DNA of 64,000 nucleotides from Mytilus trossulus (Eukaryota): NCBI RefSeq assembly GCF_036588685.1, contig NC_086380.1, forward strand, positions 73,036,001-73,100,000, written 5' to 3'. The translations under genes were made by a program, and so were the position numbers. The notes beneath the pieces are model-generated. The model saw only the letters and a list, made by a program, of their open reading frames with translations. It was not told the DNA's origin and ran no database searches. Position 1 is the first letter of the stretch; each line of letters opens with the position of its first letter. Below are positions 9,418-60,334 of the stretch, in pieces.

Positions 9418-9427
9418 ATTACCTGCA

Positions 9428-13027: not shown

Positions 13028-13037
13028 ATTACCTGCA

Positions 13038-16637: not shown

Positions 16638-16647
16638 ATTACCTGCA

Positions 16648-20247: not shown

Positions 20248-20257
20248 ATTACCTGCA

Positions 20258-23857: not shown

Positions 23858-23867
23858 ATTACCTGCA

Positions 23868-27467: not shown

Positions 27468-27477
27468 ATTACCTGCA

Positions 27478-27936
27478 TCAGATAAGACAACACGGTAAAT
27501 GATTATTTGTACACTGTTTTGCCCGTCTACAGAAAATTCTCTCTATGTTTATACTGTGCGACTCTAAGATCAGGTGCTCCGGTTTAATACATTTGGGGTT
27601 ATGGCAAAGGTGTGAAATATCTAAAGGATCACCGTTTGGAGAGAAACGGGGAAGATTTTCTTTTAATATTCTTTTATCTAGCATATAAGATAATCTGTGA
27701 GCTCTTTCAAGAGTTCTAGTGCCATCAGGCCAATTCATAACTTTTTTCCCATAGACCCCATGCTCCAAAGCTCCAACCCACACTGTACAGTCATAATTTC
27801 CATGATTTTTTTCACTTTTCTTAGACAAAGCTAAAGCCAATGCATTCCAAAATGATTCCATGTTGTTTCTGTAAAATGAAAACCCAAAAGGGGTCCGAAA
27901 TTGGGATCCCAGGGAGGCTGAGGGGTGAATTCCCAT
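27478..27936 (-). CDS. His-Me finger endonuclease
   Basis: Identical copy. Confidence 0.9.
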   Translation of the reverse strand: MGIHPSASLGSQFRTPFGFSFYRNNMESFWNALALALSKKSEKNHGNYDCTVWVGALEHGVYGKKVMNWPDGTRTLERAHRLSYMLDKRILKENLPRFSPNGDPLDISHLCHNPKCIKPEHLILESHSINIERIFCRRAKQCTNNHLPCCLI

Positions 27937-28651
27937 TATTTACCTTATACTGTACTTTCAAACCCCTTTTAGTATCAAAATATTCTTATATTCTTGTTGT
28001 TATATATGTAAGTAATAGAAAATAATAAGTTACAATGGTAGTTTTTTCATTATTGTATTTTTATAGTACTTCTAGTAACTATACCCTGTTTGCGGCAAGA
28101 TGTGTTTTTTTCCTGTTCACTATTTTTTTTTTTTTTATGCAATTTATATTTTTTTTTGTCTACTTAATAAACTCATTATATATTTGTGTTTTTCTTGTAC
28201 CTTTGTGTAATAGCTATTTGAATCATGGTTAGTTTTACTACAATCTGTTTATTTTGTAGAATTTTTGTTTTCTTTATGTACTATACCATAAAATGCATAA
28301 AAAGTTGTCATACAAGCTTCAAAAAACTATCCCTATAACAAAAACATACACCTTATCTTTACTTTCTGTTTATGTTATAGCACACAAGCCTGTCAGCACT
28401 GATAAAAAAATTCAATGAAGAGAGGTCAAATTATATGAACTTGTCAAATTACAAAATAATGAGATTAACCATCATGATGATTTTTATATGATTTATATAA
28501 AAAATCTTACATCTGGGGTCACCTTCAGTACCATCTGATATAAACAAAAAACTTAGTCATTCATGATTGTTTAGTTGTAAGGTCCTATATTTGTTATTTA
28601 AATATTAAAATACTGGAATAAAGTGCATTTCAAACAATTCTTACAATAACA

Positions 28652-31077
28652 ATGGGTCTAATCCCATGGCGTCTAAGGAAATACACATTTCAGAAAGGAA
28701 ACAAGCCATATAATAAGGGGAAAAAATACAGAAATAAGACTTTACCTGCTGAAAAAGGCAAATTTGTGAGACTACCAAAAGACTTGTATGACTTAGTGAC
28801 TAAATCTGTTCATAATAAGAATGTTCAACTCATTCCTGCCTCTACAAAATCAGCTCGCTTTCTAAGGCCGAAGCCTCCGACAAAAACAGAAGTTGAAAAA
28901 TGTGCTGAAAATGAAACAAAAACAGGGTAAGAATACTTTTTTTTGTTATTAAGCTTTCAAAAATAATTAAACTTGCTTAAAAAAGTCACTTATAAACAAC
29001 TATGAAGAAAAAGGCATGTGTCTTATATGCCAATTCTTTAAATGTGACAGCTGAAGAAAATGCAAGCTAGGATAATACTTATTTTTAAATTTCTAGTCCT
29101 ATATATATTTTCAAGAATTAAATAGTGCATGATTTTTATATATAATATATATAAAAACACAGGCAAAGAAAAAAATATGCACTTTTGAGAGTAAATTTGA
29201 TCATTAAGCTTATTTAAAGAAAACACTATTGTAAGGGAGGTAATTCAAAATAAAATTATTTTCACCTTTCCAAAACTTAGTTTTTACAAATAAAAAACTA
29301 ATTCACTTCAATTTTGGCAACATTTTTCAACTTCAGGTCAGAGAAAAATAGTTTTCGACTCCTTCGGATCAATGAACTTGAACAGATGTGGAATGAGGTT
29401 TTCATAGAACACAGAAAAATATCCCCTATGTGTACAGGGTTCATATCATGGGATTTAAGTGCAGAACAGCAAAGAGGGGCTGCCTGGAGGGAAAAGGCAA
29501 GCTGCAATAAGTGTTCTTACCATTCAAAAATGTTCAACCTTTACAATGAGGTGATCGCAAAGAAACGTGGTCGTCGAACAGCAGCTATTAATCTATCCAT
29601 ACAAGTCGCACTTAATCACATAGCTATCAGCACAACTGGTCTACAGAAATTATTTCTTGGTTCTAATATACCAGCTCCTTCCACTTCAAGTATGCAACAC
29701 AGTGCTAATGTTGTTTCTGAAATTATAGAAGAGTACAATCAAAAGGATTTGGTTCAGAAAAGAAAATTACTGAAGGAAATAAACATATTAAGAGGTGATA
29801 ATCCTAATATTATTAACATTCAGGCCGACGGAATGTATAATAACCCTATTTATTCCGGAATGGGTAAAACACCATTTCAACCAGCTACTCAATGTACGTA
29901 TAACATGTTAGAAAATAATACTTATAAGCACAGTATTGTAAGCACAAGACAAGTGTCTAAGCTTTGCTCAAATAAGAGTGAACATAAAACAAAAACAAAA
30001 GTTAAATCTCACAAAGGTCACTGTTCCGCAAACATTGAAATGCATGACAGCATAGGCAGTGAGGAGCGATGGGCTAAAGACTGCTTGTTAGACCTGAAAA
30101 ATGATGGTCTGGAAGTTCAAGAAATTACCACTGACCCTGACAGCAGTGCATTTAGAGCTGCAGAGTCTCTCTTTAAAGCTGGTACAACCAATACTCAGCC
30201 AATTCATTTTCTAGATACGAGACATGTGTCCGCAAATCATAGAAATTTTATTAAAAAAATGTCAGGTCTGAAGGAAATAATGCCGGCACGATTAGTTTCA
30301 GAGAAAGATAAAATGCTAAAAAGGTTTGCATTAGATATGGCAGCACGTTGTCAGGCAGAGTACAATGCTGCCTTTGATAAATTCAATATGGACTCTGTAC
30401 GGGTAAAAGTTCACCTATCATATGCATGTCATGCTATAGTTTCTTGCTATCAGGGCGATCATAATGGTTGTACAAAATATTCCCTTGTTTGTTCAAATAG
30501 GAACAGTTTGAAGACATGGACTGAAAAATCAGCTTATCTGAAAAATAACTTTAAATTAAATAAATCAGAGAACACAGCAGCATTGTTACGTGAATGCGTA
30601 AAATATCGCCTTGGACCTACCATGCTAAACTGTACATGCAAAAACACTAACACACAAAAAGCTGAAGCAACTAACCGTGCAATACGTGCAACTGTACCTA
30701 GCAATGTAACATTTACCAGAAACTATAAAGGAAGGGTACATACAGCTATACATAACGTAAATAATGGCCCTGGAGAATCCATCGTGAAACTCTGTCAAGC
30801 GGCTGGGGTTCCCATCGAACCAGGAAGTCGTGCTGCCCATGGTCTGAAAAATATTCAACAACATAATGAAAAACATAAATCATATAAGCAGTCAAAGAAG
30901 TACACAGATCAGAGATGCTCAAAAAAACATGAACTGTATAAAATATATGATGAGCATCAAGAGGAAAAAGACTATGAGAAAAACAAACTTTTACCGACAA
31001 AACGACTGGCCGCAAAACAACCTCAAGAGTATTCGTTTGCCAAAAAACTCCGATCAAGACATGTTAAAAATAAATAA
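28652..31077 (+). CDS. DDD/E transposase, two exons (intron 28927-29336)
   Basis: Identical copy. Confidence 0.87.
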
Positions 31078-31087
31078 ATTACCTGCA

Positions 31088-31546
31088 TCAGATAAGACAA
31101 CACGGTAAATGATTATTTGTACACTGTTTTGCCCGTCTACAGAAAATTCTCTCTATGTTTATACTGTGCGACTCTAAGATCAGGTGCTCCGGTTTAATAC
31201 ATTTGGGGTTATGGCAAAGGTGTGAAATATCTAAAGGATCACCGTTTGGAGAGAAACGGGGAAGATTTTCTTTTAATATTCTTTTATCTAGCATATAAGA
31301 TAATCTGTGAGCTCTTTCAAGAGTTCTAGTGCCATCAGGCCAATTCATAACTTTTTTCCCATAGACCCCATGCTCCAAAGCTCCAACCCACACTGTACAG
31401 TCATAATTTCCATGATTTTTTTCACTTTTCTTAGACAAAGCTAAAGCCAATGCATTCCAAAATGATTCCATGTTGTTTCTGTAAAATGAAAACCCAAAAG
31501 GGGTCCGAAATTGGGATCCCAGGGAGGCTGAGGGGTGAATTCCCAT
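31088..31546 (-). CDS. His-Me finger endonuclease (LDR dimer immediately upstream)
   Basis: Identical copy. Confidence 0.9.
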   Translation of the reverse strand: MGIHPSASLGSQFRTPFGFSFYRNNMESFWNALALALSKKSEKNHGNYDCTVWVGALEHGVYGKKVMNWPDGTRTLERAHRLSYMLDKRILKENLPRFSPNGDPLDISHLCHNPKCIKPEHLILESHSINIERIFCRRAKQCTNNHLPCCLI

Positions 31547-31559
31547 TATTTACCTTATA

Positions 31560-32018
31560 GGTTGCACTTGTGTAAAACCAGCAATGCAATTTTCCATAGG
31601 AACTGCCTAAATTGCATATGCAGTCACTCTTCATTCAGGAAGTTTTGAGGAGAATGTTAGATTTCCCTGGAAAGGAGACATGCACTACTTTTTTTTGCAC
31701 TAATAAAAACATATAGCTGTGCGGCATATTTTCAAGTTTTACTGCCCTCCATTTATAAACATTGCAGGTTCGCACTGAATTTTTCCATTAAATTTGACTC
31801 AACACCCAAATGTCTTCCAGTCCTCCTGAAAAATAAGTTAAATAAATAGACATTTTTATTTATATCCATTTAATTCTCCAATCAAGTCTTAATTAAAAAA
31901 AAAAAACTTTGCATCCATGGCAACAACTATGTAAACAGTAGCAGTATTTAGTGCACATTCAATTTCTCCCCAAAAGAGGCGTGACTTGCAAATCACACGT
32001 GATTTACAAAGTGCAACC
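31560..32018 (+). mobile_element. 459-bp LDR (long direct repeat) / non-autonomous TIR module, copy 1
   Basis: Starts GGTTGCACTTGTGTAAA and ends TTTACAAAGTGCAACC (10-bp perfect TIR, extending to ~16 bp with one bulge). Flanked by TATA at 31556-31559 and 32019-32022. Absent from most unit junctions. Confidence 0.93.
31878..32001. promoter_or_regulatory. Candidate promoter motif cluster in the LDR (also in LDR copies 2 and 3)
   Basis: CCAATCA (31878-31884), RFX X-box-like GCATCCATGGCAAC (31911-31924), forkhead-like TGTAAACA (31930-31937), E-box CACGTG (31996-32001). These are motif matches only. Confidence 0.4.
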
Positions 32019-32022
32019 TATA

Positions 32023-32481
32023 GGTTGCACTTGTGTAAAACCAGCAATGCAATTTTCCATAGGAACTGCCTAAATTGCATATGCAGTCACTCTTCATTCA
32101 GGAAGTTTTGAGGAGAATGTTAGATTTCCCTGGAAAGGAGACATGCACTACTTTTTTTTGCACTAATAAAAACATATAGCTGTGCGGCATATTTTCAAGT
32201 TTTACTGCCCTCCATTTATAAACATTGCAGGTTCGCACTGAATTTTTCCATTAAATTTGACTCAACACCCAAATGTCTTCCAGTCCTCCTGAAAAATAAG
32301 TTAAATAAATAGACATTTTTATTTATATCCATTTAATTCTCCAATCAAGTCTTAATTAAAAAAAAAAAACTTTGCATCCATGGCAACAACTATGTAAACA
32401 GTAGCAGTATTTAGTGCACATTCAATTTCTCCCCAAAAGAGGCGTGACTTGCAAATCACACGTGATTTACAAAGTGCAACC
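32023..32481 (+). mobile_element. 459-bp LDR / non-autonomous TIR module, copy 2 (tandem with copy 1)
   Basis: Same sequence and orientation as 31560-32018; flanked by TATA at 32019-32022 and 32482-32485. Confidence 0.93.
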
Positions 32482-33187
32482 TATACTGTACTTTCAAACC
32501 CCTTTTAGTATCAAAATATTCTTATATTCTTGTTGTTATATATGTAAGTAATAGAAAATAATAAGTTACAATGGTAGTTTTTTCATTATTGTATTTTTAT
32601 AGTACTTCTAGTAACTATACCCTGTTTGCGGCAAGATGTGTTTTTTTCCTGTTCACTATTTTTTTTTTTTTTATGCAATTTATATTTTTTTTTGTCTACT
32701 TAATAAACTCATTATATATTTGTGTTTTTCTTGTACCTTTGTGTAATAGCTATTTGAATCATGGTTAGTTTTACTACAATCTGTTTATTTTGTAGAATTT
32801 TTGTTTTCTTTATGTACTATACCATAAAATGCATAAAAAGTTGTCATACAAGCTTCAAAAAACTATCCCTATAACAAAAACATACACCTTATCTTTACTT
32901 TCTGTTTATGTTATAGCACACAAGCCTGTCAGCACTGATAAAAAAATTCAATGAAGAGAGGTCAAATTATATGAACTTGTCAAATTACAAAATAATGAGA
33001 TTAACCATCATGATGATTTTTATATGATTTATATAAAAAATCTTACATCTGGGGTCACCTTCAGTACCATCTGATATAAACAAAAAACTTAGTCATTCAT
33101 GATTGTTTAGTTGTAAGGTCCTATATTTGTTATTTAAATATTAAAATACTGGAATAAAGTGCATTTCAAACAATTCTTACAATAACA

Positions 33188-35613
33188 ATGGGTCTAATCC
33201 CATGGCGTCTAAGGAAATACACATTTCAGAAAGGAAACAAGCCATATAATAAGGGGAAAAAATACAGAAATAAGACTTTACCTGCTGAAAAAGGCAAATT
33301 TGTGAGACTACCAAAAGACTTGTATGACTTAGTGACTAAATCTGTTCATAATAAGAATGTTCAACTCATTCCTGCCTCTACAAAATCAGCTCGCTTTCTA
33401 AGGCCGAAGCCTCCGACAAAAACAGAAGTTGAAAAATGTGCTGAAAATGAAACAAAAACAGGGTAAGAATACTTTTTTTTGTTATTAAGCTTTCAAAAAT
33501 AATTAAACTTGCTTAAAAAAGTCACTTATAAACAACTATGAAGAAAAAGGCATGTGTCTTATATGCCAATTCTTTAAATGTGACAGCTGAAGAAAATGCA
33601 AGCTAGGATAATACTTATTTTTAAATTTCTAGTCCTATATATATTTTCAAGAATTAAATAGTGCATGATTTTTATATATAATATATATAAAAACACAGGC
33701 AAAGAAAAAAATATGCACTTTTGAGAGTAAATTTGATCAAAAAGCTTATTTAAAGAAAACACTATTGTAAGGGAGGTAATTCAAAATAAAATTATTTTCA
33801 CCTTTCCAAAACTTAGTTTTTACAAATAAAAAACTAATTCACTTCAATTTTGGCAACATTTTTCAACTTCAGGTCAGAGAAAAATAGTTTTCGACTCCTT
33901 CGGATCAATGAACTTGAACAGATGTGGAATGAGGTTTTCATAGAACACAGAAAAATATCCCCTATGTGTACAGGGTTCATATCATGGGATTTAAGTGCAG
34001 AACAGCAAAGAGGGGCTGCCTGGAGGGAAAAGGCAAGCTGCAATAAGTGTTCTTACCATTCAAAAATGTTCAACCTTTACAATGAGGTGATCGCAAAGAA
34101 ACGTGGTCGTCGAACAGCAGCTATTAATCTATCCATACAAGTCGCACTTAATCACATAGCTATCAGCACAACTGGTCTACAGAAATTATTTCTTGGTTCT
34201 AATATACCAGCTCCTTCCACTTCAAGTATGCAACACAGTGCTAATGTTGTTTCTGAAATTATAGAAGAGTACAATCAAAAGGATTTGGTTCAGAAAAGAA
34301 AATTACTGAAGGAAATAAACATATTAAGAGGTGATAATCCTAATATTATTAACATTCAGGCCGACGGAATGTATAATAACCCTATTTATTCCGGAATGGG
34401 TAAAACACCATTTCAACCAGCTACTCAATGTACGTATAACATGTTAGAAAATAATACTTATAAGCACAGTATTGTAAGCACAAGACAAGTGTCTAAGCTT
34501 TGCTCAAATAAGAGTGAACATAAAACAAAAACAAAAGTTAAATCTCACAAAGGTCACTGTTCCGCAAACATTGAAATGCATGACAGCATAGGCAGTGAGG
34601 AGCGATGGGCTAAAGACTGCTTGTTAGACCTGAAAAATGATGGTCTGGAAGTTCAAGAAATTACCACTGACCCTGACAGCAGTGCATTTAGAGCTGCAGA
34701 GTCTCTCTTTAAAGCTGGTACAACCAATACTCAGCCAATTCATTTTCTAGATACGAGACATGTGTCCGCAAATCATAGAAATTTTATTAAAAAAATGTCA
34801 GGTCTGAAGGAAATAATGCCGGCACGATTAGTTTCAGAGAAAGATAAAATGCTAAAAAGGTTTGCATTAGATATGGCAGCACGTTGTCAGGCAGAGTACA
34901 ATGCTGCCTTTGATAAATTCAATATGGACTCTGTACGGGTAAAAGTTCACCTATCATATGCATGTCATGCTATAGTTTCTTGCTATCAGGGCGATCATAA
35001 TGGTTGTACAAAATATTCCCTTGTTTGTTCAAATAGGAACAGTTTGAAGACATGGACTGAAAAATCAGCTTATCTGAAAAATAACTTTAAATTAAATAAA
35101 TCAGAAAACACAGCAGCATTGTTACGTGAATGCGTAAAATATCGCCTTGGACCTACCATGCTAAACTGTACATGCAAAAACACTAACACACAAAAAGCTG
35201 AAGCAACTAACCGTGCAATACGTGCAACTGTACCTAGCAATGTAACATTTACCAGAAACTATAAAGGAAGGGTACATACAGCTATACATAACGTAAATAA
35301 TGGCCCTGGAGAATCCATCGTGAAACTCTGTCAAGCGGCTGGGGTTCCCATCGAACCAGGAAGTCGTGCTGCCCATGGTCTGAAAAATATTCAACAACAT
35401 AATGAAAAACATAAATCATATAAGCAGTCAAAGAAGTACACAGATCAGAGATGCTCAAAAAAACATGAACTGTATAAAATATATGATGAGCATCAAGAGG
35501 AAAAAGACTATGAGAAAAACAAACTTTTACCGACAAAACGACTGGCCGCAAAACAACCTCAAGAGTATTCGTTTGCCAAAAAACTCCGATCAAGACATGT
35601 TAAAAATAAATAA
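33188..35613 (+). CDS. DDD/E transposase, two exons (intron 33463-33872); directly downstream of the LDR dimer
   Basis: Same protein; synonymous GAG>GAA at 35106. Confidence 0.87.
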
Positions 35614-35623
35614 ATTACCTGCA

Positions 35624-36082
35624 TCAGATAAGACAACACGGTAAATGATTATTTGTACACTGTTTTGCCCGTCTACAGAAAATTCTCTCTATGTTTATAC
35701 TGTGCGACTCTAAGATCAGGTGCTCCGGTTTAATACATTTGGGGTTATGGCAAAGGTGTGAAATATCTAAAGGATCACCGTTTGGAGAGAAACGGGGAAG
35801 ATTTTCTTTTAATATTCTTTTATCTAGCATATAAGATAATCTGTGAGCTCTTTCAAGAGTTCTAGTGCCATCAGGCCAATTCATAACTTTTTTCCCATAG
35901 ACCCCATGCTCCAAAGCTCCAACCCACACTGTACAGTCATAATTTCCATGATTTTTTTCACTTTTCTTAGACAAAGCTAAAGCCAATGCATTCCAAAATG
36001 ATTCCATGTTGTTTCTGTAAAATGAAAACCCAAAAGGGGTCCGAAATTGGGATCCCAGGGAGGCTGAGGGGTGAATTCCCAT
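35624..36082 (-). CDS. His-Me finger endonuclease
   Basis: Identical copy. Confidence 0.9.
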   Translation of the reverse strand: MGIHPSASLGSQFRTPFGFSFYRNNMESFWNALALALSKKSEKNHGNYDCTVWVGALEHGVYGKKVMNWPDGTRTLERAHRLSYMLDKRILKENLPRFSPNGDPLDISHLCHNPKCIKPEHLILESHSINIERIFCRRAKQCTNNHLPCCLI

Positions 36083-36797
36083 TATTTACCTTATACTGTA
36101 CTTTCAAACCCCTTTTAGTATCAAAATATTCTTATATTCTTGTTGTTATATATGTAAGTAATAGAAAATAATAAGTTACAATGGTAGTTTTTTCATTATT
36201 GTATTTTTATAGTACTTCTAGTAACTATACCCTGTTTGCGGCAAGATGTGTTTTTTTCCTGTTCACTATTTTTTTTTTTTTTATGCAATTTATATTTTTT
36301 TTTGTCTACTTAATAAACTCATTATATATTTGTGTTTTTCTTGTACCTTTGTGTAATAGCTATTTGAATCATGGTTAGTTTTACTACAATCTGTTTATTT
36401 TGTAGAATTTTTGTTTTCTTTATGTACTATACCATAAAATGCATAAAAAGTTGTCATACAAGCTTCAAAAAACTATCCCTATAACAAAAACATACACCTT
36501 ATCTTTACTTTCTGTTTATGTTATAGCACACAAGCCTGTCAGCACTGATAAAAAAATTCAATGAAGAGAGGTCAAATTATATGAACTTGTCAAATTACAA
36601 AATAATGAGATTAACCATCATGATGATTTTTATATGATTTATATAAAAAATCTTACATCTGGGGTCACCTTCAGTACCATCTGATATAAACAAAAAACTT
36701 AGTCATTCATGATTGTTTAGTTGTAAGGTCCTATATTTGTTATTTAAATATTAAAATACTGGAATAAAGTGCATTTCAAACAATTCTTACAATAACA

Positions 36798-39223
36798 ATG
36801 GGTCTAATCCCATGGCGTCTAAGGAAATACACATTTCAGAAAGGAAACAAGCCATATAATAAGGGGAAAAAATACAGAAATAAGACTTTACCTGCTGAAA
36901 AAGGCAAATTTGTGAGACTACCAAAAGACTTGTATGACTTAGTGACTAAATCTGTTCATAATAAGAATGTTCAACTCATTCCTGCCTCTACAAAATCAGC
37001 TCGCTTTCTAAGGCCGAAGCCTCCGACAAAAACAGAAGTTGAAAAATGTGCTGAAAATGAAACAAAAACAGGGTAAGAATACTTTTTTTTGTTATTAAGC
37101 TTTCAAAAATAATTAAACTTGCTTAAAAAAGTCACTTATAAACAACTATGAAGAAAAAGGCATGTGTCTTATATGCCAATTCTTTAAATGTGACAGCTGA
37201 AGAAAATGCAAGCTAGGATAATACTTATTTTTAAATTTCTAGTCCTATATATATTTTCAAGAATTAAATAGTGCATGATTTTTATATATAATATATATAA
37301 AAACACAGGCAAAGAAAAAAATATGCACTTTTGAGAGTAAATTTGATCAAAAAGCTTATTTAAAGAAAACACTATTGTAAGGGAGGTAATTCAAAATAAA
37401 ATTATTTTCACCTTTCCAAAACTTAGTTTTTACAAATAAAAAACTAATTCACTTCAATTTTGGCAACATTTTTCAACTTCAGGTCAGAGAAAAATAGTTT
37501 TCGACTCCTTCGGATCAATGAACTTGAACAGATGTGGAATGAGGTTTTCATAGAACACAGAAAAATATCCCCTATGTGTACAGGGTTCATATCATGGGAT
37601 TTAAGTGCAGAACAGCAAAGAGGGGCTGCCTGGAGGGAAAAGGCAAGCTGCAATAAGTGTTCTTACCATTCAAAAATGTTCAACCTTTACAATGAGGTGA
37701 TCGCAAAGAAACGTGGTCGTCGAACAGCAGCTATTAATCTATCCATACAAGTCGCACTTAATCACATAGCTATCAGCACAACTGGTCTACAGAAATTATT
37801 TCTTGGTTCTAATATACCAGCTCCTTCCACTTCAAGTATGCAACACAGTGCTAATGTTGTTTCTGAAATTATAGAAGAGTACAATCAAAAGGATTTGGTT
37901 CAGAAAAGAAAATTACTGAAGGAAATAAACATATTAAGAGGTGATAATCCTAATATTATTAACATTCAGGCCGACGGAATGTATAATAACCCTATTTATT
38001 CCGGAATGGGTAAAACACCATTTCAACCAGCTACTCAATGTACGTATAACATGTTAGAAAATAATACTTATAAGCACAGTATTGTAAGCACAAGACAAGT
38101 GTCTAAGCTTTGCTCAAATAAGAGTGAACATAAAACAAAAACAAAAGTTAAATCTCACAAAGGTCACTGTTCCGCAAACATTGAAATGCATGACAGCATA
38201 GGCAGTGAGGAGCGATGGGCTAAAGACTGCTTGTTAGACCTGAAAAATGATGGTCTGGAAGTTCAAGAAATTACCACTGACCCTGACAGCAGTGCATTTA
38301 GAGCTGCAGAGTCTCTCTTTAAAGCTGGTACAACCAATACTCAGCCAATTCATTTTCTAGATACGAGACATGTGTCCGCAAATCATAGAAATTTTATTAA
38401 AAAAATGTCAGGTCTGAAGGAAATAATGCCGGCACGATTAGTTTCAGAGAAAGATAAAATGCTAAAAAGGTTTGCATTAGATATGGCAGCACGTTGTCAG
38501 GCAGAGTACAATGCTGCCTTTGATAAATTCAATATGGACTCTGTACGGGTAAAAGTTCACCTATCATATGCATGTCATGCTATAGTTTCTTGCTATCAGG
38601 GCGATCATAATGGTTGTACAAAATATTCCCTTGTTTGTTCAAATAGGAACAGTTTGAAGACATGGACTGAAAAATCAGCTTATCTGAAAAATAACTTTAA
38701 ATTAAATAAATCAGAGAACACAGCAGCATTGTTACGTGAATGCGTAAAATATCGCCTTGGACCTACCATGCTAAACTGTACATGCAAAAACACTAACACA
38801 CAAAAAGCTGAAGCAACTAACCGTGCAATACGTGCAACTGTACCTAGCAATGTAACATTTACCAGAAACTATAAAGGAAGGGTACATACAGCTATACATA
38901 ACGTAAATAATGGCCCTGGAGAATCCATCGTGAAACTCTGTCAAGCGGCTGGGGTTCCCATCGAACCAGGAAGTCGTGCTGCCCATGGTCTGAAAAATAT
39001 TCAACAACATAATGAAAAACATAAATCATATAAGCAGTCAAAGAAGTACACAGATCAGAGATGCTCAAAAAAACATGAACTGTATAAAATATATGATGAG
39101 CATCAAGAGGAAAAAGACTATGAGAAAAACAAACTTTTACCGACAAAACGACTGGCCGCAAAACAACCTCAAGAGTATTCGTTTGCCAAAAAACTCCGAT
39201 CAAGACATGTTAAAAATAAATAA
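36798..39223 (+). CDS. DDD/E transposase, two exons (intron 37073-37482)
   Basis: Identical protein. Confidence 0.87.
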
Positions 39224-39233
39224 ATTACCTGCA

Positions 39234-39692
39234 TCAGATAAGACAACACGGTAAATGATTATTTGTACACTGTTTTGCCCGTCTACAGAAAATTCTCTCT
39301 ATGTTTATACTGTGCGACTCTAAGATCAGGTGCTCCGGTTTAATACATTTGGGGTTATGGCAAAGGTGTGAAATATCTAAAGGATCACCGTTTGGAGAGA
39401 AACGGGGAAGATTTTCTTTTAATATTCTTTTATCTAGCATATAAGATAATCTGTGAGCTCTTTCAAGAGTTCTAGTGCCATCAGGCCAATTCATAACTTT
39501 TTTCCCATAGACCCCATGCTCCAAAGCTCCAACCCACACTGTACAGTCATAATTTCCATGATTTTTTTCACTTTTCTTAGACAAAGCTAAAGCCAATGCA
39601 TTCCAAAATGATTCCATGTTGTTTCTGTAAAATGAAAACCCAAAAGGGGTCCGAAATTGGGATCCCAGGGAGGCTGAGGGGTGAATTCCCAT
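39234..39692 (-). CDS. His-Me finger endonuclease (LDR copy 3 immediately upstream)
   Basis: Identical copy. Confidence 0.9.
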   Translation of the reverse strand: MGIHPSASLGSQFRTPFGFSFYRNNMESFWNALALALSKKSEKNHGNYDCTVWVGALEHGVYGKKVMNWPDGTRTLERAHRLSYMLDKRILKENLPRFSPNGDPLDISHLCHNPKCIKPEHLILESHSINIERIFCRRAKQCTNNHLPCCLI

Positions 39693-39705
39693 TATTTACC
39701 TTATA

Positions 39706-40164
39706 GGTTGCACTTGTGTAAAACCAGCAATGCAATTTTCCATAGGAACTGCCTAAATTGCATATGCAGTCACTCTTCATTCAGGAAGTTTTGAGGAGAA
39801 TGTTAGATTTCCCTGGAAAGGAGACATGCACTACTTTTTTTTGCACTAATAAAAACATATAGCTGTGCGGCATATTTTCAAGTTTTACTGCCCTCCATTT
39901 ATAAACATTGCAGGTTCGCACTGAATTTTTCCATTAAATTTGACTCAACACCCAAATGTCTTCCAGTCCTCCTGAAAAATAAGTTAAATAAATAGACATT
40001 TTTATTTATATCCATTTAATTCTCCAATCAAGTCTTAATTAAAAAAAAAAAACTTTGCATCCATGGCAACAACTATGTAAACAGTAGCAGTATTTAGTGC
40101 ACATTCAATTTCTCCCCAAAAGAGGCGTGACTTGCAAATCACACGTGATTTACAAAGTGCAACC
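39706..40164 (+). mobile_element. 459-bp LDR / non-autonomous TIR module, copy 3
   Basis: Same sequence and orientation; flanked by TATA at 39702-39705 and 40165-40168, at the same unit position as copies 1-2. Confidence 0.93.
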
Positions 40165-40870
40165 TATACTGTACTTTCAAACCCCTTTTAGTATCAAAAT
40201 ATTCTTATATTCTTGTTGTTATATATGTAAGTAATAGAAAATAATAAGTTACAATGGTAGTTTTTTCATTATTGTATTTTTATAGTACTTCTAGTAACTA
40301 TACCCTGTTTGCGGCAAGATGTGTTTTTTTCCTGTTCACTATTTTTTTTTTTTTTATGCAATTTATATTTTTTTTTGTCTACTTAATAAACTCATTATAT
40401 ATTTGTGTTTTTCTTGTACCTTTGTGTAATAGCTATTTGAATCATGGTTAGTTTTACTACAATCTGTTTATTTTGTAGAATTTTTGTTTTCTTTATGTAC
40501 TATACCATAAAATGCATAAAAAGTTGTCATACAAGCTTCAAAAAACTATCCCTATAACAAAAACATACACCTTATCTTTACTTTCTGTTTATGTTATAGC
40601 ACACAAGCCTGTCAGCACTGATAAAAAAATTCAATGAAGAGAGGTCAAATTATATGAACTTGTCAAATTACAAAATAATGAGATTAACCATCATGATGAT
40701 TTTTATATGATTTATATAAAAAATCTTACATCTGGGGTCACCTTCAGTACCATCTGATATAAACAAAAAACTTAGTCATTCATGATTGTTTAGTTGTAAG
40801 GTCCTATATTTGTTATTTAAATATTAAAATACTGGAATAAAGTGCATTTCAAACAATTCTTACAATAACA

Positions 40871-43296
40871 ATGGGTCTAATCCCATGGCGTCTAAGGAAA
40901 TACACATTTCAGAAAGGAAACAAGCCATATAATAAGGGGAAAAAATACAGAAATAAGACTTTACCTGCTGAAAAAGGCAAATTTGTGAGACTACCAAAAG
41001 ACTTGTATGACTTAGTGACTAAATCTGTTCATAATAAGAATGTTCAACTCATTCCTGCCTCTACAAAATCAGCTCGCTTTCTAAGGCCGAAGCCTCCGAC
41101 AAAAACAGAAGTTGAAAAATGTGCTGAAAATGAAACAAAAACAGGGTAAGAATACTTTTTTTTGTTATTAAGCTTTCAAAAATAATTAAACTTGCTTAAA
41201 AAAGTCACTTATAAACAACTATGAAGAAAAAGGCATGTGTCTTATATGCCAATTCTTTAAATGTGACAGCTGAAGAAAATGCAAGCTAGGATAATACTTA
41301 TTTTTAAATTTCTAGTCCTATATATATTTTCAAGAATTAAATAGTGCATGATTTTTATATATAATATATATAAAAACACAGGCAAAGAAAAAAATATGCA
41401 CTTTTGAGAGTAAATTTGATCAAAAAGCTTATTTAAAGAAAACACTATTGTAAGGGAGGTAATTCAAAATAAAATTATTTTCACCTTTCCAAAACTTAGT
41501 TTTTACAAATAAAAAACTAATTCACTTCAATTTTGGCAACATTTTTCAACTTCAGGTCAGAGAAAAATAGTTTTCGACTCCTTCGGATCAATGAACTTGA
41601 ACAGATGTGGAATGAGGTTTTCATAGAACACAGAAAAATATCCCCTATGTGTACAGGGTTCATATCATGGGATTTAAGTGCAGAACAGCAAAGAGGGGCT
41701 GCCTGGAGGGAAAAGGCAAGCTGCAATAAGTGTTCTTACCATTCAAAAATGTTCAACCTTTACAATGAGGTGATCGCAAAGAAACGTGGTCGTCGAACAG
41801 CAGCTATTAATCTATCCATACAAGTCGCACTTAATCACATAGCTATCAGCACAACTGGTCTACAGAAATTATTTCTTGGTTCTAATATACCAGCTCCTTC
41901 CACTTCAAGTATGCAACACAGTGCTAATGTTGTTTCTGAAATTATAGAAGAGTACAATCAAAAGGATTTGGTTCAGAAAAGAAAATTACTGAAGGAAATA
42001 AACATATTAAGAGGTGATAATCCTAATATTATTAACATTCAGGCCGACGGAATGTATAATAACCCTATTTATTCCGGAATGGGTAAAACACCATTTCAAC
42101 CAGCTACTCAATGTACGTATAACATGTTAGAAAATAATACTTATAAGCACAGTATTGTAAGCACAAGACAAGTGTCTAAGCTTTGCTCAAATAAGAGTGA
42201 ACATAAAACAAAAACAAAAGTTAAATCTCACAAAGGTCACTGTTCCGCAAACATTGAAATGCATGACAGCATAGGCAGTGAGGAGCGATGGGCTAAAGAC
42301 TGCTTGTTAGACCTGAAAAATGATGGTCTGGAAGTTCAAGAAATTACCACTGACCCTGACAGCAGTGCATTTAGAGCTGCAGAGTCTCTCTTTAAAGCTG
42401 GTACAACCAATACTCAGCCAATTCATTTTCTAGATACGAGACATGTGTCCGCAAATCATAGAAATTTTATTAAAAAAATGTCAGGTCTGAAGGAAATAAT
42501 GCCGGCACGATTAGTTTCAGAGAAAGATAAAATGCTAAAAAGGTTTGCATTAGATATGGCAGCACGTTGTCAGGCAGAGTACAATGCTGCCTTTGATAAA
42601 TTCAATATGGACTCTGTACGGGTAAAAGTTCACCTATCATATGCATGTCATGCTATAGTTTCTTGCTATCAGGGCGATCATAATGGTTGTACAAAATATT
42701 CCCTTGTTTGTTCAAATAGGAACAGTTTGAAGACATGGACTGAAAAATCAGCTTATCTGAAAAATAACTTTAAATTAAATAAATCAGAGAACACAGCAGC
42801 ATTGTTACGTGAATGCGTAAAATATCGCCTTGGACCTACCATGCTAAACTGTACATGCAAAAACACTAACACACAAAAAGCTGAAGCAACTAACCGTGCA
42901 ATACGTGCAACTGTACCTAGCAATGTAACATTTACCAGAAACTATAAAGGAAGGGTACATACAGCTATACATAACGTAAATAATGGCCCTGGAGAATCCA
43001 TCGTGAAACTCTGTCAAGCGGCTGGGGTTCCCATCGAACCAGGAAGTCGTGCTGCCCATGGTCTGAAAAATATTCAACAACATAATGAAAAACATAAATC
43101 ATATAAGCAGTCAAAGAAGTACACAGATCAGAGATGCTCAAAAAAACATGAACTGTATAAAATATATGATGAGCATCAAGAGGAAAAAGACTATGAGAAA
43201 AACAAACTTTTACCGACAAAACGACTGGCCGCAAAACAACCTCAAGAGTATTCGTTTGCCAAAAAACTCCGATCAAGACATGTTAAAAATAAATAA
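40871..43296 (+). CDS. DDD/E transposase, two exons (intron 41146-41555); directly downstream of LDR copy 3
   Basis: Identical protein. Confidence 0.87.
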
Positions 43297-43306
43297 ATTA
43301 CCTGCA

Positions 43307-43765
43307 TCAGATAAGACAACACGGTAAATGATTATTTGTACACTGTTTTGCCCGTCTACAGAAAATTCTCTCTATGTTTATACTGTGCGACTCTAAGATC
43401 AGGTGCTCCGGTTTAATACATTTGGGGTTATGGCAAAGGTGTGAAATATCTAAAGGATCACCGTTTGGAGAGAAACGGGGAAGATTTTCTTTTAATATTC
43501 TTTTATCTAGCATATAAGATAATCTGTGAGCTCTTTCAAGAGTTCTAGTGCCATCAGGCCAATTCATAACTTTTTTCCCATAGACCCCATGCTCCAAAGC
43601 TCCAACCCACACTGTACAGTCATAATTTCCATGATTTTTTTCACTTTTCTTAGACAAAGCTAAAGCCAATGCATTCCAAAATGATTCCATGTTGTTTCTG
43701 TAAAATGAAAACCCAAAAGGGGTCCGAAATTGGGATCCCAGGGAGGCTGAGGGGTGAATTCCCAT
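43307..43765 (-). CDS. His-Me finger endonuclease
   Basis: Identical copy. Confidence 0.9.
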   Translation of the reverse strand: MGIHPSASLGSQFRTPFGFSFYRNNMESFWNALALALSKKSEKNHGNYDCTVWVGALEHGVYGKKVMNWPDGTRTLERAHRLSYMLDKRILKENLPRFSPNGDPLDISHLCHNPKCIKPEHLILESHSINIERIFCRRAKQCTNNHLPCCLI

Positions 43766-44479
43766 TATTTACCTTATACTGTACTTTCAAACCCCTTTTA
43801 GTATCAAAATATTCTTATATTCTTGTTGTTATATATGTAAGTAATAGAAAATAATAAGTTACAATGGTAGTTTTTTCATTATTGTATTTTTATAGTACTT
43901 CTAGTAACTATACCCTGTTTGCGGCAAGATGTGTTTTTTTCCTGTTCACTATTTTTTTTTTTTTATGCAATTTATATTTTTTTTTGTCTACTTAATAAAC
44001 TCATTATATATTTGTGTTTTTCTTGTACCTTTGTGTAATAGCTATTTGAATCATGGTTAGTTTTACTACAATCTGTTTATTTTGTAGAATTTTTGTTTTC
44101 TTTATGTACTATACCATAAAATGCATAAAAAGTTGTCATACAAGCTTCAAAAAACTATCCCTATAACAAAAACATACACCTTATCTTTACTTTCTGTTTA
44201 TGTTATAGCACACAAGCCTGTCAGCACTGATAAAAAAATTCAATGAAGAGAGGTCAAATTATATGAACTTGTCAAATTACAAAATAATGAGATTAACCAT
44301 CATGATGATTTTTATATGATTTATATAAAAAATCTTACATCTGGGGTCACCTTCAGTACCATCTGATATAAACAAAAAACTTAGTCATTCATGATTGTTT
44401 AGTTGTAAGGTCCTATATTTGTTATTTAAATATTAAAATACTGGAATAAAGTGCATTTCAAACAATTCTTACAATAACA

Positions 44480-46905
44480 ATGGGTCTAATCCCATGGCGT
44501 CTAAGGAAATACACATTTCAGAAAGGAAACAAGCCATATAATAAGGGGAAAAAATACAGAAATAAGACTTTACCTGCTGAAAAAGGCAAATTTGTGAGAC
44601 TACCAAAAGACTTGTATGACTTAGTGACTAAATCTGTTCATAATAAGAATGTTCAACTCATTCCTGCCTCTACAAAATCAGCTCGCTTTCTAAGGCCGAA
44701 GCCTCCGACAAAAACAGAAGTTGAAAAATGTGCTGAAAATGAAACAAAAACAGGGTAAGAATACTTTTTTTTGTTATTAAGCTTTCAAAAATAATTAAAC
44801 TTGCTTAAAAAAGTCACTTATAAACAACTATGAAGAAAAAGGCATGTGTCTTATATGCCAATTCTTTAAATGTGACAGCTGAAGAAAATGCAAGCTAGGA
44901 TAATACTTATTTTTAAATTTCTAGTCCTATATATATTTTCAAGAATTAAATAGTGCATGATTTTTATATATAATATATATAAAAACACAGGCAAAGAAAA
45001 AAATATGCACTTTTGAGAGTAAATTTGATCAAAAAGCTTATTTAAAGAAAACACTATTGTAAGGGAGGTAATTCAAAATAAAATTATTTTCACCTTTCCA
45101 AAACTTAGTTTTTACAAATAAAAAACTAATTCACTTCAATTTTGGCAACATTTTTCAACTTCAGGTCAGAGAAAAATAGTTTTCGACTCCTTCGGATCAA
45201 TGAACTTGAACAGATGTGGAATGAGGTTTTCATAGAACACAGAAAAATATCCCCTATGTGTACAGGGTTCATATCATGGGATTTAAGTGCAGAACAGCAA
45301 AGAGGGGCTGCCTGGAGGGAAAAGGCAAGCTGCAATAAGTGTTCTTACCATTCAAAAATGTTCAACCTTTACAATGAGGTGATCGCAAAGAAACGTGGTC
45401 GTCGAACAGCAGCTATTAATCTATCCATACAAGTCGCACTTAATCACATAGCTATCAGCACAACTGGTCTACAGAAATTATTTCTTGGTTCTAATATACC
45501 AGCTCCTTCCACTTCAAGTATGCAACACAGTGCTAATGTTGTTTCTGAAATTATAGAAGAGTACAATCAAAAGGATTTGGTTCAGAAAAGAAAATTACTG
45601 AAGGAAATAAACATATTAAGAGGTGATAATCCTAATATTATTAACATTCAGGCCGACGGAATGTATAATAACCCTATTTATTCCGGAATGGGTAAAACAC
45701 CATTTCAACCAGCTACTCAATGTACGTATAACATGTTAGAAAATAATACTTATAAGCACAGTATTGTAAGCACAAGACAAGTGTCTAAGCTTTGCTCAAA
45801 TAAGAGTGAACATAAAACAAAAACAAAAGTTAAATCTCACAAAGGTCACTGTTCCGCAAACATTGAAATGCATGACAGCATAGGCAGTGAGGAGCGATGG
45901 GCTAAAGACTGCTTGTTAGACCTGAAAAATGATGGTCTGGAAGTTCAAGAAATTACCACTGACCCTGACAGCAGTGCATTTAGAGCTGCAGAGTCTCTCT
46001 TTAAAGCTGGTACAACCAATACTCAGCCAATTCATTTTCTAGATACGAGACATGTGTCCGCAAATCATAGAAATTTTATTAAAAAAATGTCAGGTCTGAA
46101 GGAAATAATGCCGGCACGATTAGTTTCAGAGAAAGATAAAATGCTAAAAAGGTTTGCATTAGATATGGCAGCACGTTGTCAGGCAGAGTACAATGCTGCC
46201 TTTGATAAATTCAATATGGACTCTGTACGGGTAAAAGTTCACCTATCATATGCATGTCATGCTATAGTTTCTTGCTATCAGGGCGATCATAATGGTTGTA
46301 CAAAATATTCCCTTGTTTGTTCAAATAGGAACAGTTTGAAGACATGGACTGAAAAATCAGCTTATCTGAAAAATAACTTTAAATTAAATAAATCAGAGAA
46401 CACAGCAGCATTGTTACGTGAATGCGTAAAATATCGCCTTGGACCTACCATGCTAAACTGTACATGCAAAAACACTAACACACAAAAAGCTGAAGCAACT
46501 AACCGTGCAATACGTGCAACTGTACCTAGCAATGTAACATTTACCAGAAACTATAAAGGAAGGGTACATACAGCTATACATAACGTAAATAATGGCCCTG
46601 GAGAATCCATCGTGAAACTCTGTCAAGCGGCTGGGGTTCCCATCGAACCAGGAAGTCGTGCTGCCCATGGTCTGAAAAATATTCAACAACATAATGAAAA
46701 ACATAAATCATATAAGCAGTCAAAGAAGTACACAGATCAGAGATGCTCAAAAAAACATGAACTGTATAAAATATATGATGAGCATCAAGAGGAAAAAGAC
46801 TATGAGAAAAACAAACTTTTACCGACAAAACGACTGGCCGCAAAACAACCTCAAGAGTATTCGTTTGCCAAAAAACTCCGATCAAGACATGTTAAAAATA
46901 AATAA
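44480..46905 (+). CDS. DDD/E transposase, two exons (intron 44755-45164)
   Basis: Identical protein. Confidence 0.87.
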
Positions 46906-46915
46906 ATTACCTGCA

Positions 46916-47374
46916 TCAGATAAGACAACACGGTAAATGATTATTTGTACACTGTTTTGCCCGTCTACAGAAAATTCTCTCTATGTTTATACTGTGCGAC
47001 TCTAAGATCAGGTGCTCCGGTTTAATACATTTGGGGTTATGGCAAAGGTGTGAAATATCTAAAGGATCACCGTTTGGAGAGAAACGGGGAAGATTTTCTT
47101 TTAATATTCTTTTATCTAGCATATAAGATAATCTGTGAGCTCTTTCAAGAGTTCTAGTGCCATCAGGCCAATTCATAACTTTTTTCCCATAGACCCCATG
47201 CTCCAAAGCTCCAACCCACACTGTACAGTCATAATTTCCATGATTTTTTTCACTTTTCTTAGACAAAGCTAAAGCCAATGCATTCCAAAATGATTCCATG
47301 TTGTTTCTGTAAAATGAAAACCCAAAAGGGGTCCGAAATTGGGATCCCAGGGAGGCTGAGGGGTGAATTCCCAT
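46916..47374 (-). CDS. His-Me finger endonuclease
   Basis: Identical copy. Confidence 0.9.
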   Translation of the reverse strand: MGIHPSASLGSQFRTPFGFSFYRNNMESFWNALALALSKKSEKNHGNYDCTVWVGALEHGVYGKKVMNWPDGTRTLERAHRLSYMLDKRILKENLPRFSPNGDPLDISHLCHNPKCIKPEHLILESHSINIERIFCRRAKQCTNNHLPCCLI

Positions 47375-48089
47375 TATTTACCTTATACTGTACTTTCAAA
47401 CCCCTTTTAGTATCAAAATATTCTTATATTCTTGTTGTTATATATGTAAGTAATAGAAAATAATAAGTTACAATGGTAGTTTTTTCATTATTGTATTTTT
47501 ATAGTACTTCTAGTAACTATACCCTGTTTGCGGCAAGATGTGTTTTTTTCCTGTTCACTATTTTTTTTTTTTTTATGCAATTTATATTTTTTTTTGTCTA
47601 CTTAATAAACTCATTATATATTTGTGTTTTTCTTGTACCTTTGTGTAATAGCTATTTGAATCATGGTTAGTTTTACTACAATCTGTTTATTTTGTAGAAT
47701 TTTTGTTTTCTTTATGTACTATACCATAAAATGCATAAAAAGTTGTCATACAAGCTTCAAAAAACTATCCCTATAACAAAAACATACACCTTATCTTTAC
47801 TTTCTGTTTATGTTATAGCACACAAGCCTGTCAGCACTGATAAAAAAATTCAATGAAGAGAGGTCAAATTATATGAACTTGTCAAATTACAAAATAATGA
47901 GATTAACCATCATGATGATTTTTATATGATTTATATAAAAAATCTTACATCTGGGGTCACCTTCAGTACCATCTGATATAAACAAAAAACTTAGTCATTC
48001 ATGATTGTTTAGTTGTAAGGTCCTATATTTGTTATTTAAATATTAAAATACTGGAATAAAGTGCATTTCAAACAATTCTTACAATAACA

Positions 48090-50005: not shown

Positions 50006-50105
50006 NNNNNNNNNNNNNNNNNNNNNNNNNNNNNNNNNNNNNNNNNNNNNNNNNNNNNNNNNNNNNNNNNNNNNNNNNNNNNNNNNNNNNNNNNNNNNNN
50101 NNNNN
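50006..50105. other. Assembly gap (100 N, unknown true size)
   Basis: Run of exactly 100 n; the same repeat lies on both sides in the same orientation but at different unit positions. Confidence 0.99.
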
Positions 50106-53105: not shown

Positions 53106-53115
53106 ATTACCTGCA

Positions 53116-56714: not shown

Positions 56715-56724
56715 ATTACCTGCA

Positions 56725-60324: not shown

Positions 60325-60334
60325 ATTACCTGCA

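What the first reader, a model, noticed from the sequence alone, without database searches (positions are those of the whole stretch)
31556..40168. A 459-bp TIR module present or cleanly absent at one fixed TATA: detachable transposon ends
Seen: 14 of 16 visible junctions read TTTACCT-TATA-CTGTAC, and two read TTTACCT-TATA-[GGTTGCACTT...AAGTGCAACC]-TATA-CTGTAC. All three modules are in the same orientation at the same TATA, although each AT-rich unit has many other TATA sites. Empty junctions show no footprint. Inference: the module is the element's own LDR and supplies the TIRs that the INT lacks. It either excises precisely (piggyBac-like restoration of the 4-bp site) or re-inserts site-specifically. 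The element can then toggle between an immobile INT array and a mobilisable LDR-INT-LDR form.
Basis: partly seen in the sequence, partly recalled or inferred. Interest (0 to 1): 0.85.

Follow-up and report, generated by a model that had tools for sequence, protein, structure and literature searches.

The report
Known KolobokP transposon array, mussel
The 459-base module is the published terminal repeat (LTDR) of the mussel DNA transposon KolobokP-5_MyEd, and its presence or clean absence at one TATA between tandem copies of the transposon body was already described for this transposon lineage in 2022, so the finding is correct but not new.

Summary
The whole 64-kb window is a head-to-tail array of a 3,610-bp unit. 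Of 16 visible junctions, 14 read TTTACCT-TATA-CTGTAC, one carries a 459-bp module and one carries two modules in tandem. The modules are identical, point the same way and are each flanked by TATA.

The element is already published as KolobokP (Kojima & Bao 2022, PMC9587614). The unit matches the consensus KolobokP-5_MyEd-I, and the module matches the LTDR of its M. coruscus counterpart, KolobokP-3_MyCo. The sizes fit exactly: 459 + 3,614 + 459 = 4,532 bp, the published full length.

That paper already reports all of the following:
- LTDR-INT-LTDR monomers, solo LTDRs and (LTDR-INT)n multimers.
- LTDR-less INT-INT junctions that keep a single TATA.
- Inferred excision of LTDRs as non-autonomous transposons.

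Repeated toggling and site-specific re-insertion are neither needed nor shown. Eight adjacent units share a private 2-bp variant, which points to one or a few LTDR losses later spread by unequal crossover.

Modest additions here: a very long, nearly mutation-free INT-only run with intact genes, and a chromosomal abutted-TIR palindrome.

The parts
1..64000 (+). Tandem multimer of the KolobokP-5_MyEd internal region (INT). It holds 14 complete units, the two incomplete units cut by the window's ends, and the interval 47384-53583 broken by the N gap. The array runs off both ends of the window.
   Evidence: Junction spacing 3610 bp. Units differ at 4 columns only. Partial units at both ends match the unit.
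31560..32018 (+). LTDR copy 1 (459 bp), flanked by TATA at 31556-31559 and 32019-32022
   Evidence: Matches the published KolobokP-3_MyCo LTDR.
32023..32481 (+). LTDR copy 2, in tandem with copy 1. It shares the single TATA at 32019-32022 and is followed by TATA at 32482-32485.
   Evidence: TRF period 463, 2.0 copies, 100% match
32009..32032 (.). Perfect 24-bp palindrome AAGTGCAACC-TATA-GGTTGCACTT, formed by the abutted right and left TIRs of the two LTDRs
   Evidence: The sequence equals its own reverse complement
39706..40164 (+). LTDR copy 3 (single), flanked by TATA at 39702-39705 and 40165-40168
32482..36095 (+). One complete INT as defined in the published consensus (3614 bp, starting and ending with TATA)
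   Evidence: The published KolobokP-5_MyEd-I begins tatactgtactttcaaacc and ends cattatttaccttata. 459 + 3614 + 459 = 4532, the published full length.
33188..33462 (+). Transposase exon 1 (inferred GT donor at 33463)
   Evidence: ORF list. The spliced model gives 671 aa with no internal stop. Exon 1 is conserved in L002, L006 and L022. The splice itself is not confirmed by RNA.
33873..35613 (+). Transposase exon 2, encoding a Kolobok DDD/E transposase that Pfam names 'Mutator-like'
   Evidence: PF20700, E 4.1e-46. Invariant D172, D274/D276, D301-x-x-H304 and E451 across 11 relatives.
35624..36082 (-). His-Me finger (His-Cys box, I-PpoI-like) nuclease gene, convergent with the transposase. Its conserved part starts near residue 24-26 of the ORF.
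   Evidence: PF05551, E 1.7e-15. Weak match to I-PpoI, E 0.006, over SHLCHN..C..P.HL. Conserved next to the transposase in 18 of 22 related loci.
36092..36095 (.). Example of an LTDR-less INT-INT junction with a single TATA. The other 13 are at 2676, 6286, 9896, 13506, 17116, 20726, 24336, 27946, 43775, 47384, 53584, 57193 and 60803.
2676..31555 (+). Block of 8 consecutive INT units that carry a private TT (instead of AA) variant, all with empty junctions. Its right end is the LTDR dimer.
50006..50105 (.). Assembly gap (N) inside the array. The number of units and the junction states across it are unknown, and it was left untouched.

Best explanation
The window is a large multimer of the published composite-like DNA transposon KolobokP-5_MyEd, the Mytilus counterpart of KolobokP-3_MyCo.

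The 3,610-bp unit is its internal region (INT). INT encodes a 671-aa Kolobok DDD/E transposase and, on the other strand, an I-PpoI-like His-Me nuclease. The 459-bp module is its long terminal direct repeat (LTDR), which carries the only terminal inverted repeats.

[quoted passage not shown] An INT-INT junction with one TATA is an LTDR-less junction. It forms when an LTDR is lost together with one of its two flanking TATAs. The published inference is excision of the LTDR as a small non-autonomous transposon, but a deletion between the two TATAs would give the same product.

In this array that loss probably happened once or a few times (inferred). The LTDR-less unit was then multiplied by unequal crossover or gene conversion, which also keeps the units almost identical.

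The three LTDRs are either remnants of the original multimer or later additions at the flanking TATA. The dimer is an LTDR next to an LTDR with one 4-bp spacer, a configuration that also appears in the published supplementary figures for another family.

Shown here: the identity with the published family, the anatomy, the gene pair and the local amplification. Inferred: the mechanism of LTDR loss and the origin of the dimer.
For: Match to the published sequences:
- KolobokP-5_MyEd-I has the same first and last bases as the unit, including the terminal TATAs.
- The first 70 nt shown of KolobokP-3_MyCo-LTDR differ from the module at 2 positions, and both end in AAGTGCAACC.
- Table S1 gives KolobokP-5_MyEd as 4532 bp with a 459-bp LTDR and 10-bp TIR, which equals 459 + 3614 + 459 here.

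What the paper already describes:
- The paper describes INT-INT junctions with a single TATA, LTDR-(INT)n-LTDR structures, solo LTDRs and inferred LTDR excision.
- Its supplementary figure text shows tandem LTDRs sharing one TTAA.

Genes:
- PF20700 transposase and PF05551 His-Me nuclease.
- The convergent gene pair is conserved in 18 of 22 metagenome relatives at 30-54% identity.

Filled junction in independent data:
- One run of another organism label (X4) gives a single closed 4073-bp contig cycle, which is INT plus one LTDR.
- Metagenome contig L001, 98.5% identical, carries INT-TATA-LTDR.
- Contigs in X9 and X14 carry the LTDR end plus TATA followed by heterogeneous flanks, which indicates LTDR copies at other loci.

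Local amplification:
- Eight adjacent units share a private TT variant.
- The units are otherwise nearly identical.
Against: - The empty junction was not seen in any listed contig record of the four public runs, so it rests on this assembly alone. An N gap also interrupts the array.
- The ends of the array and its TSDs lie outside the window.
- The published table gives only 6 INT copies for this family in an older short-read assembly. The array's size is therefore new and unverified.
- The match to the published consensus was judged by eye on OCR-noisy supplementary text and was not computed.
Confidence: 0.9

Rival explanations
1. Active toggle. LTDRs are repeatedly and precisely excised and then re-inserted at this one TATA, so the array keeps switching between an immobile INT-only state and a mobilisable LTDR-INT-LTDR state.
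For: - All genes are intact and the units are almost mutation-free.
- The LTDRs are 100% identical.
- An LTDR dimer sharing one TATA is what a second insertion into the TATA beside a resident LTDR would give.
- LTDR excision is inferred in the literature.
Against: - The fixed site and orientation are explained by descent from an (LTDR-INT)n multimer.
- The private TT variant shared by 8 adjacent empty units shows that the empty junctions were copied and not made one by one.
- The paper finds no strong target specificity for KolobokP.
- No read-level polymorphism at a given junction could be examined, because all four runs laid were contigs.
Confidence: 0.1
2. The LTDR-less junctions arose without transposase, by deletion between the two 4-bp TATA repeats (microhomology-mediated repair or replication slippage). 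They then spread by unequal crossover.
For: The product, LTDR plus one TATA removed, is identical to that of excision. The amplification step is supported.
Against: - Four base pairs of homology is very short.
- The paper's counts (40 INT-LTDR against 6 LTDR-INT, plus solo INTs) favour transposase-type excision of LTDRs in another family.
- LTDR-less junctions recur in several KolobokP families.
Confidence: 0.25
3. The module is an unrelated MITE that inserted once into the array and was then duplicated.
For: It has TIRs, a 4-bp TATA duplication and no ORF. LTDR-like copies occur at other loci.
Against: - The same LTDR and INT pair is published as one family in two Mytilus species, with LTDR-INT-LTDR copies bounded by TSDs.
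- A closed LTDR+INT cycle occurs in another organism's run.
- A 98.5%-identical diverged copy has the same junction.
- Relatives L016 and L022 also carry TIR-bounded modules (about 459 and 446 bp) with TATA on at least one side.
Confidence: 0.02
4. The filled and empty pattern is an assembly artefact in a near-identical array.
For: Units are more than 99.9% identical. There is an N gap. The empty junction was not confirmed in the listed public contigs. In run X14 an exact LTDR contig has about the same depth as INT (370 against 342), unlike the 3:17 ratio here.
Against: - An assembler does not create fourteen exact 463-bp deletions.
- The same junction type is published for other KolobokP families from other assemblies.
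- In X14 a contig starts exactly at the junction TATA, as expected if two different upstream paths share only TATA.
Confidence: 0.07

Closest known systems
KolobokP-5_MyEd (Mytilus edulis) and KolobokP-3_MyCo (M. coruscus), Kojima & Bao 2022, Mob DNA 13:24 (PMC9587614)
   Same: Same INT start and end sequence. The LTDR sequence matches the published KolobokP-3_MyCo LTDR (the KolobokP-5_MyEd LTDR text was not found in the supplement). Also the same: 459-bp LTDR, 10-bp TIR, 4532-bp monomer length, convergent transposase and His-Me nuclease.
   Different: Here the element forms a run of at least 17 INTs with only 3 LTDRs. The table lists 6 INT and 32 LTDR copies in an older assembly, with the TSD undetermined.
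KolobokP-1_MeMe LTDR-(INT)2-4-LTDR multimers (same paper)
   Same: INT starts and ends with TATA, and only one TATA is left at INT-INT junctions. The authors read this as excision of a solo LTDR.
   Different: A different family and species. The longest published run is 4 INTs, against at least 9 consecutive here.
Bacterial composite transposons and IS26-type translocatable units
   Same: Two directly repeated, TIR-bearing modules flank a payload. The modules can move alone. A circle of one module plus the payload is proposed. Closed LTDR+INT cycles are seen here in public contigs.
   Different: In KolobokP the transposase is in the payload and not in the flanking module. The host is a eukaryote, and no biochemistry has been done.
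piggyBac (precise excision restoring TTAA)
   Same: A 4-bp T/A-rich target is restored as a single copy at the empty site.
   Different: A different transposase superfamily. For KolobokP the paper describes the event as LTDR plus 1-5 flanking bp removed from one side, and it suggests an IS3/IS256-like circle. Precise excision is not shown here.
Tandem arrays of LTR retrotransposons and TRIMs
   Same: Units that share direct repeats, solo repeats, and unequal crossover.
   Different: This is a DNA transposon, its repeats have TIRs, and no reverse transcription is involved.

Membership tests
KolobokP (Kolobok superfamily, composite-like lineage) | Internal region flanked or separated by long direct repeats of about 450 or about 660 bp | tested here: met
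   The LTDR is 459 bp. LTDR-INT-INT-LTDR is present at 32023-40164.
KolobokP (Kolobok superfamily, composite-like lineage) | LTDR has its own short TIRs with termini 5'-RR...YY-3' | tested here: met
   GGTTGCACTT...AAGTGCAACC, 10 bp perfect
KolobokP (Kolobok superfamily, composite-like lineage) | DDD/E transposase with C/DxxH motif and a Cys/His cluster before the last catalytic E | tested here: met
   Invariant D172, D274/D276, D301-T-R-H304, C346, C378, C386, C393 and E451 in an 11-sequence alignment (H383 nearly invariant). PF20700, E 4e-46. A phylogenetic placement inside Kolobok was not redone.
KolobokP (Kolobok superfamily, composite-like lineage) | His-Me finger (His-Cys box) nuclease downstream on the complementary strand | tested here: met
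   PF05551, E 1.7e-15. I-PpoI motif match. Synteny is conserved in relatives.
KolobokP (Kolobok superfamily, composite-like lineage) | 3-5 bp target-site duplication at the outer ends of monomer, multimer or solo LTDR | tested here: inconclusive
   The array ends are outside the window. Contigs in X9 and X14 show the LTDR end plus TATA followed by heterogeneous flanks, which fits a 4-bp TATA-type TSD, but both sides of one insertion were never seen.
KolobokP-5_MyEd (specific family) | Sequence identity to the published consensus | tested here: met
   The INT termini and the first lines of the consensus match by eye. The length arithmetic is exact.
Independent MITE | TIRs and TSD belong to an autonomous element other than the one it sits in | tested here: not met
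   The LTDR is published as part of the same family as this INT. Closed LTDR+INT cycle in X4. L001.
piggyBac-like precise excision | Transposase-dependent excision that restores the target exactly | not testable with these tools
   Only the end products are visible, and a TATA-to-TATA deletion gives the same sequence.

The most novel reading that the evidence does not exclude
The array could be a currently active KolobokP 'factory'. In this reading the His-Me nuclease cuts the abutted-TIR palindrome (present in the chromosome at 32009-32032) or an LTDR, and so drives unequal crossover. Transposase-mediated LTDR excision and re-capture at the flanking TATA would then really switch units between a silent INT-only state and a mobilisable LTDR-INT-LTDR state. 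That would provide the first natural substrate set for testing the dual-propagation model experimentally.
Probability: 0.1. Interest if true: 0.6.

Novelty: already known. Interest (0 to 1): 0.2.

Why it matters
KolobokP is an unusual eukaryotic transposon. It is built like a bacterial composite transposon and carries a homing-type nuclease, and only two papers in the searched library mention it, neither of them experimental.

This window adds no new principle, but it is a clean natural specimen:
- The transposase and nuclease genes are intact and the units are nearly mutation-free.
- All three junction types (INT-INT, LTDR-INT and LTDR-LTDR) occur within 9 kb.
- A perfect abutted-TIR palindrome sits in the chromosome, and this is the target the authors hypothesised for the nuclease.

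It would therefore be a good source of substrates and proteins for the first biochemical test of the published model.

It also shows that older assemblies badly under-counted these arrays, and that Pfam labels this Kolobok transposase 'Mutator-like'.

Tried and rejected
- The genome search 'own': no genome is held for this window, so no genome-wide census of solo LTDRs or array ends was possible.
The Mytilus contigs behind P0002 and P0003 and the Logan contigs of relatives could not be fetched.
- The search of earlier findings by sequence returned nothing.
- Rfam and tRNA scans of one unit plus LTDR found nothing credible (best E 0.07, far below gathering). The array is therefore not built around an RNA gene.
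- Read laying returned only Logan contigs. No per-read tally of filled against empty junctions, no copy number and no proof of transcription could be obtained. RNA-library contigs cover the LTDR and parts of INT, but DNA carry-over cannot be excluded and no splice joint was listed.
- My first working idea, an unrelated MITE spread by array homogenisation, was rejected once the published family was found.
- A simple inverted-repeat scan of the metagenome relatives was noisy. Only L008, L016, L018, L022 and the end of L002 gave LTDR-like candidates.
- A computed alignment to the published consensus was not done. The supplement is OCR text, and long sequence may not be typed.
Full report
**Observation**

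The window is one continuous head-to-tail array. The motif TTTACCTTATA marks 16 junctions. Their spacing is 3610 bp, with three exceptions: 4536 (3610 + 2x463), 4073 (3610 + 463), and 6200, which contains the assembly gap at 50006-50105.

The empty-junction 17-mer TTTACCTTATACTGTAC occurs 14 times without mismatch, against 0.05 expected. The module ends (TATAGGTTGCACTT) occur as three inverted pairs. The three modules are 459 bp and identical, and two of them form a 463-bp-period tandem sharing one TATA. Each module has a perfect 10-bp TIR. Each unit has 42 TATA sites.

Fourteen complete units differ at only four alignment columns.

**What the unit encodes**

On the + strand a two-exon model (33188-33462 and 33873-35613) gives a 671-aa protein with no internal stop. 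Its large exon matches Pfam PF20700 'Mutator-like transposase' at E 4e-46.

On the - strand, convergent with it, ORF 36082-35624 matches PF05551, the zinc-binding loop of I-PpoI-type homing endonucleases, at E 1.7e-15. It aligns weakly to I-PpoI itself over the SHLCHN..C..P.HL motif.

No RNA gene was found in the unit or the module.

**Relatives**

The transposase has many homologues. The closest named ones are from Mytilus edulis and M. galloprovincialis, and earlier scan notes also call this genome a mussel.

A metagenome scan returned 22 related loci:
- 18 of them carry the same convergent transposase and His-Me nuclease pair at 30-54% identity.
- 7 of them (L005, L006, L007, L009, L014, L016, L020) repeat their own start at their end, so they assemble as closed cycles or more than one unit of 3.6-4.2 kb.
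- L016 and L022 contain modules of about 459 and about 446 bp with GG...CC TIRs. TATA flanks both sides in L022, and TATA and TATT flank L016.
- L001, 98.5% identical to the window over 2.65 kb, carries the filled junction INT-TATA-LTDR.

**Public runs**

The filled junction region is held completely by runs from 11 studies. These include seawater, macroalgal and mollusc metagenomes and several very small runs, which suggests a high copy number.

All four runs laid on window:39300-44100 were Logan contigs:
- In X4, from another organism label, one 4103-nt contig 'goes back 4073'. That is a closed cycle of one INT plus one LTDR, with no empty-junction branch.
- In X9 and X14, contigs end or start at the junction TATA.
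- In X14, an exact LTDR contig has about the same depth as INT (370 against 342).
- In both X9 and X14, four contigs carry the LTDR end plus TATA followed by heterogeneous sequence (agreement 0.55-0.57). These are LTDR copies at other loci.
- No listed record spans the empty junction.
- RNA-library contigs cover the LTDR and parts of INT. That does not prove transcription, and no splice joint was listed.

**Identification**

A literature search found Kojima & Bao 2022 (PMC9587614). The paper describes KolobokP, a Kolobok lineage especially rich in bivalves. Its features are an internal region (INT), long terminal direct repeats (LTDRs) of about 450 or about 660 bp with their own short TIRs (5'-RR...YY-3'), a DDD/E transposase, and a downstream antisense His-Me nuclease related to I-PpoI.

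The paper's supplementary data match the window:
- The consensus KolobokP-5_MyEd-I starts and ends with the same bases as this unit, including the terminal TATAs. The same holds for KolobokP-3_MyCo-I.
- The first 70 nt shown of KolobokP-3_MyCo-LTDR (458 bp) differ from the module at two positions, and both end in AAGTGCAACC.
- Table S1 lists KolobokP-5_MyEd as 4532 bp, LTDR 459, TIR 10, TSD '?'. The window gives 459 + 3614 + 459 = 4532.

The family assignment is therefore secure. Pfam's 'Mutator-like' label is only a naming difference.

**What was already known**

The paper reports each of these:
- LTDR-INT-LTDR monomers, solo LTDRs with 3-5 bp TSDs, and (LTDR-INT)n-LTDR multimers.
- An explanation of those junctions by excision of a solo LTDR. 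From counts in Corbicula, it argues that LTDRs are excised as non-autonomous transposons, possibly through a circle with a TSD-length spacer.
- Multimer growth by unequal crossover, perhaps induced by the His-Me nuclease, and the suggestion that abutted TIRs on a circle might be the nuclease target.

The supplementary figure text even shows tandem LTDRs sharing one TTAA in a Mercenaria family.

Every element of the finding therefore has a published counterpart: the detachable TIR module, clean absence at a 4-bp site, and LTDR-INT-LTDR against INT arrays.

**How it most likely works here**

The same position and orientation of all LTDRs follow from descent from an (LTDR-INT)n multimer. No site-specific insertion is needed.

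Units 2676-31555 (eight in a row, all with empty junctions) share a private TT-for-AA variant that the units on either side lack. An already LTDR-less unit was therefore copied locally, by unequal crossover or gene conversion. The near-identity of all units says the same.

The most economical history is one or a few LTDR losses followed by amplification (inferred). The loss itself (LTDR plus one TATA) could be transposase excision, which is the published view, or a TATA-to-TATA deletion. The sequence cannot distinguish the two.

The LTDR dimer sits exactly at the right edge of the TT block. It could have three origins, and none can be chosen here:
- The meeting point of two sub-arrays.
- A second LTDR insertion into the flanking TATA.
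- Recombination of an LTDR circle with a resident LTDR.

**What is modestly new**

- The INT-only run is far longer than published: at least 9 consecutive INTs and at least 17 in the window, against a published maximum of 4.
- The genes are intact and divergence is almost zero.
- A perfect 24-bp palindrome of abutted TIRs lies in the chromosome at 32009-32032.
- There is a weak indication that LTDR copies elsewhere are followed by TATA. The published TSD for this family was undetermined.
- Closed LTDR+INT cycles are common among distant relatives in metagenome assemblies.

**Limits**

The array's ends, its TSDs and a genome-wide census are therefore missing.
- The reads tool gave only contigs, so filled and empty states per molecule could not be counted. 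The empty junction is not independently confirmed.
- The N gap was left untouched.
- The comparison with the published consensus was made by eye on OCR text.

**Verdict**

The phenomenon is already known. Interest is low, apart from the window's value as a clean experimental substrate.

Noticed in passing
window 2676-31555 (variant at 3934-3935 and every 3610 bp up to 29204-29205): Eight consecutive units carry TT instead of AA in GATCA[AA/TT]AAGC. The units on both sides carry AA. This is a footprint of local tandem amplification inside the array.
   Followed up: yes
window 32009-32032: The abutted TIRs of the LTDR dimer form a perfect 24-bp palindrome centred on TATA. This is the structure that Kojima & Bao proposed, on a circular intermediate, as a possible target of the His-Me nuclease. 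I-PpoI cuts a semi-palindrome and leaves a 4-nt overhang.
   Followed up: partly
window 36008-36095, minus strand: The conserved part of the nuclease begins at Met26 of the ORF, about 80 bp from the junction. On the minus strand the junction reads TATAAG|GTAAAT, with a TTTTACAG acceptor just before that ATG, so an upstream non-coding exon in the LTDR or in the neighbouring INT is possible. No RNA evidence was obtained.
   Followed up: no
window 50006-50105 and its flanks 47384-53583: An N gap lies inside the array. The flanking pieces (2622 + 3478 bp) add up to less than two units, so at least about 1.1 kb, and possibly whole units or LTDRs, are missing.
   Followed up: partly
window 43775-47383, 53584-57192 and right of the gap: There are one-base length differences in a poly-T tract (unit column 178) and four single-base differences: column 2625 (35116 against 38716), column 1733 (left of the gap), column 745 (last unit), plus the TT/AA pair. 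These are the only variation in 64 kb.
   Followed up: yes
L005, L006, L007, L009, L014, L016, L020 (metagenome contigs): Distant relatives (32-41% transposase identity) assemble as closed cycles, or as 1.5 units, of 3.6-4.2 kb. This fits multimers or circles of LTDR+INT being usual for the lineage in marine samples.
   Followed up: partly
runs X3, X8, X11-X13: Runs of only 7-12 million letters hold 97-100% of the sampled words of the LTDR-INT junction region, and seawater metagenomes hold it fully. The element must be very abundant in mussel DNA, or these libraries are enriched for it.
   Followed up: no
window 33873-35613: Pfam calls this Kolobok transposase 'Mutator-like' (PF20700). Public protein records carry that name too, and one M. 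edulis model fuses it to a trypsin domain (P0002). These annotation labels can mislead classification.
   Followed up: partly
window 39783-39943 (inside the LTDR): In X9 and X14 this part of the LTDR has 2-6 times the summed contig depth of the rest. A sub-segment of the LTDR may be shared with other repeats.
   Followed up: no
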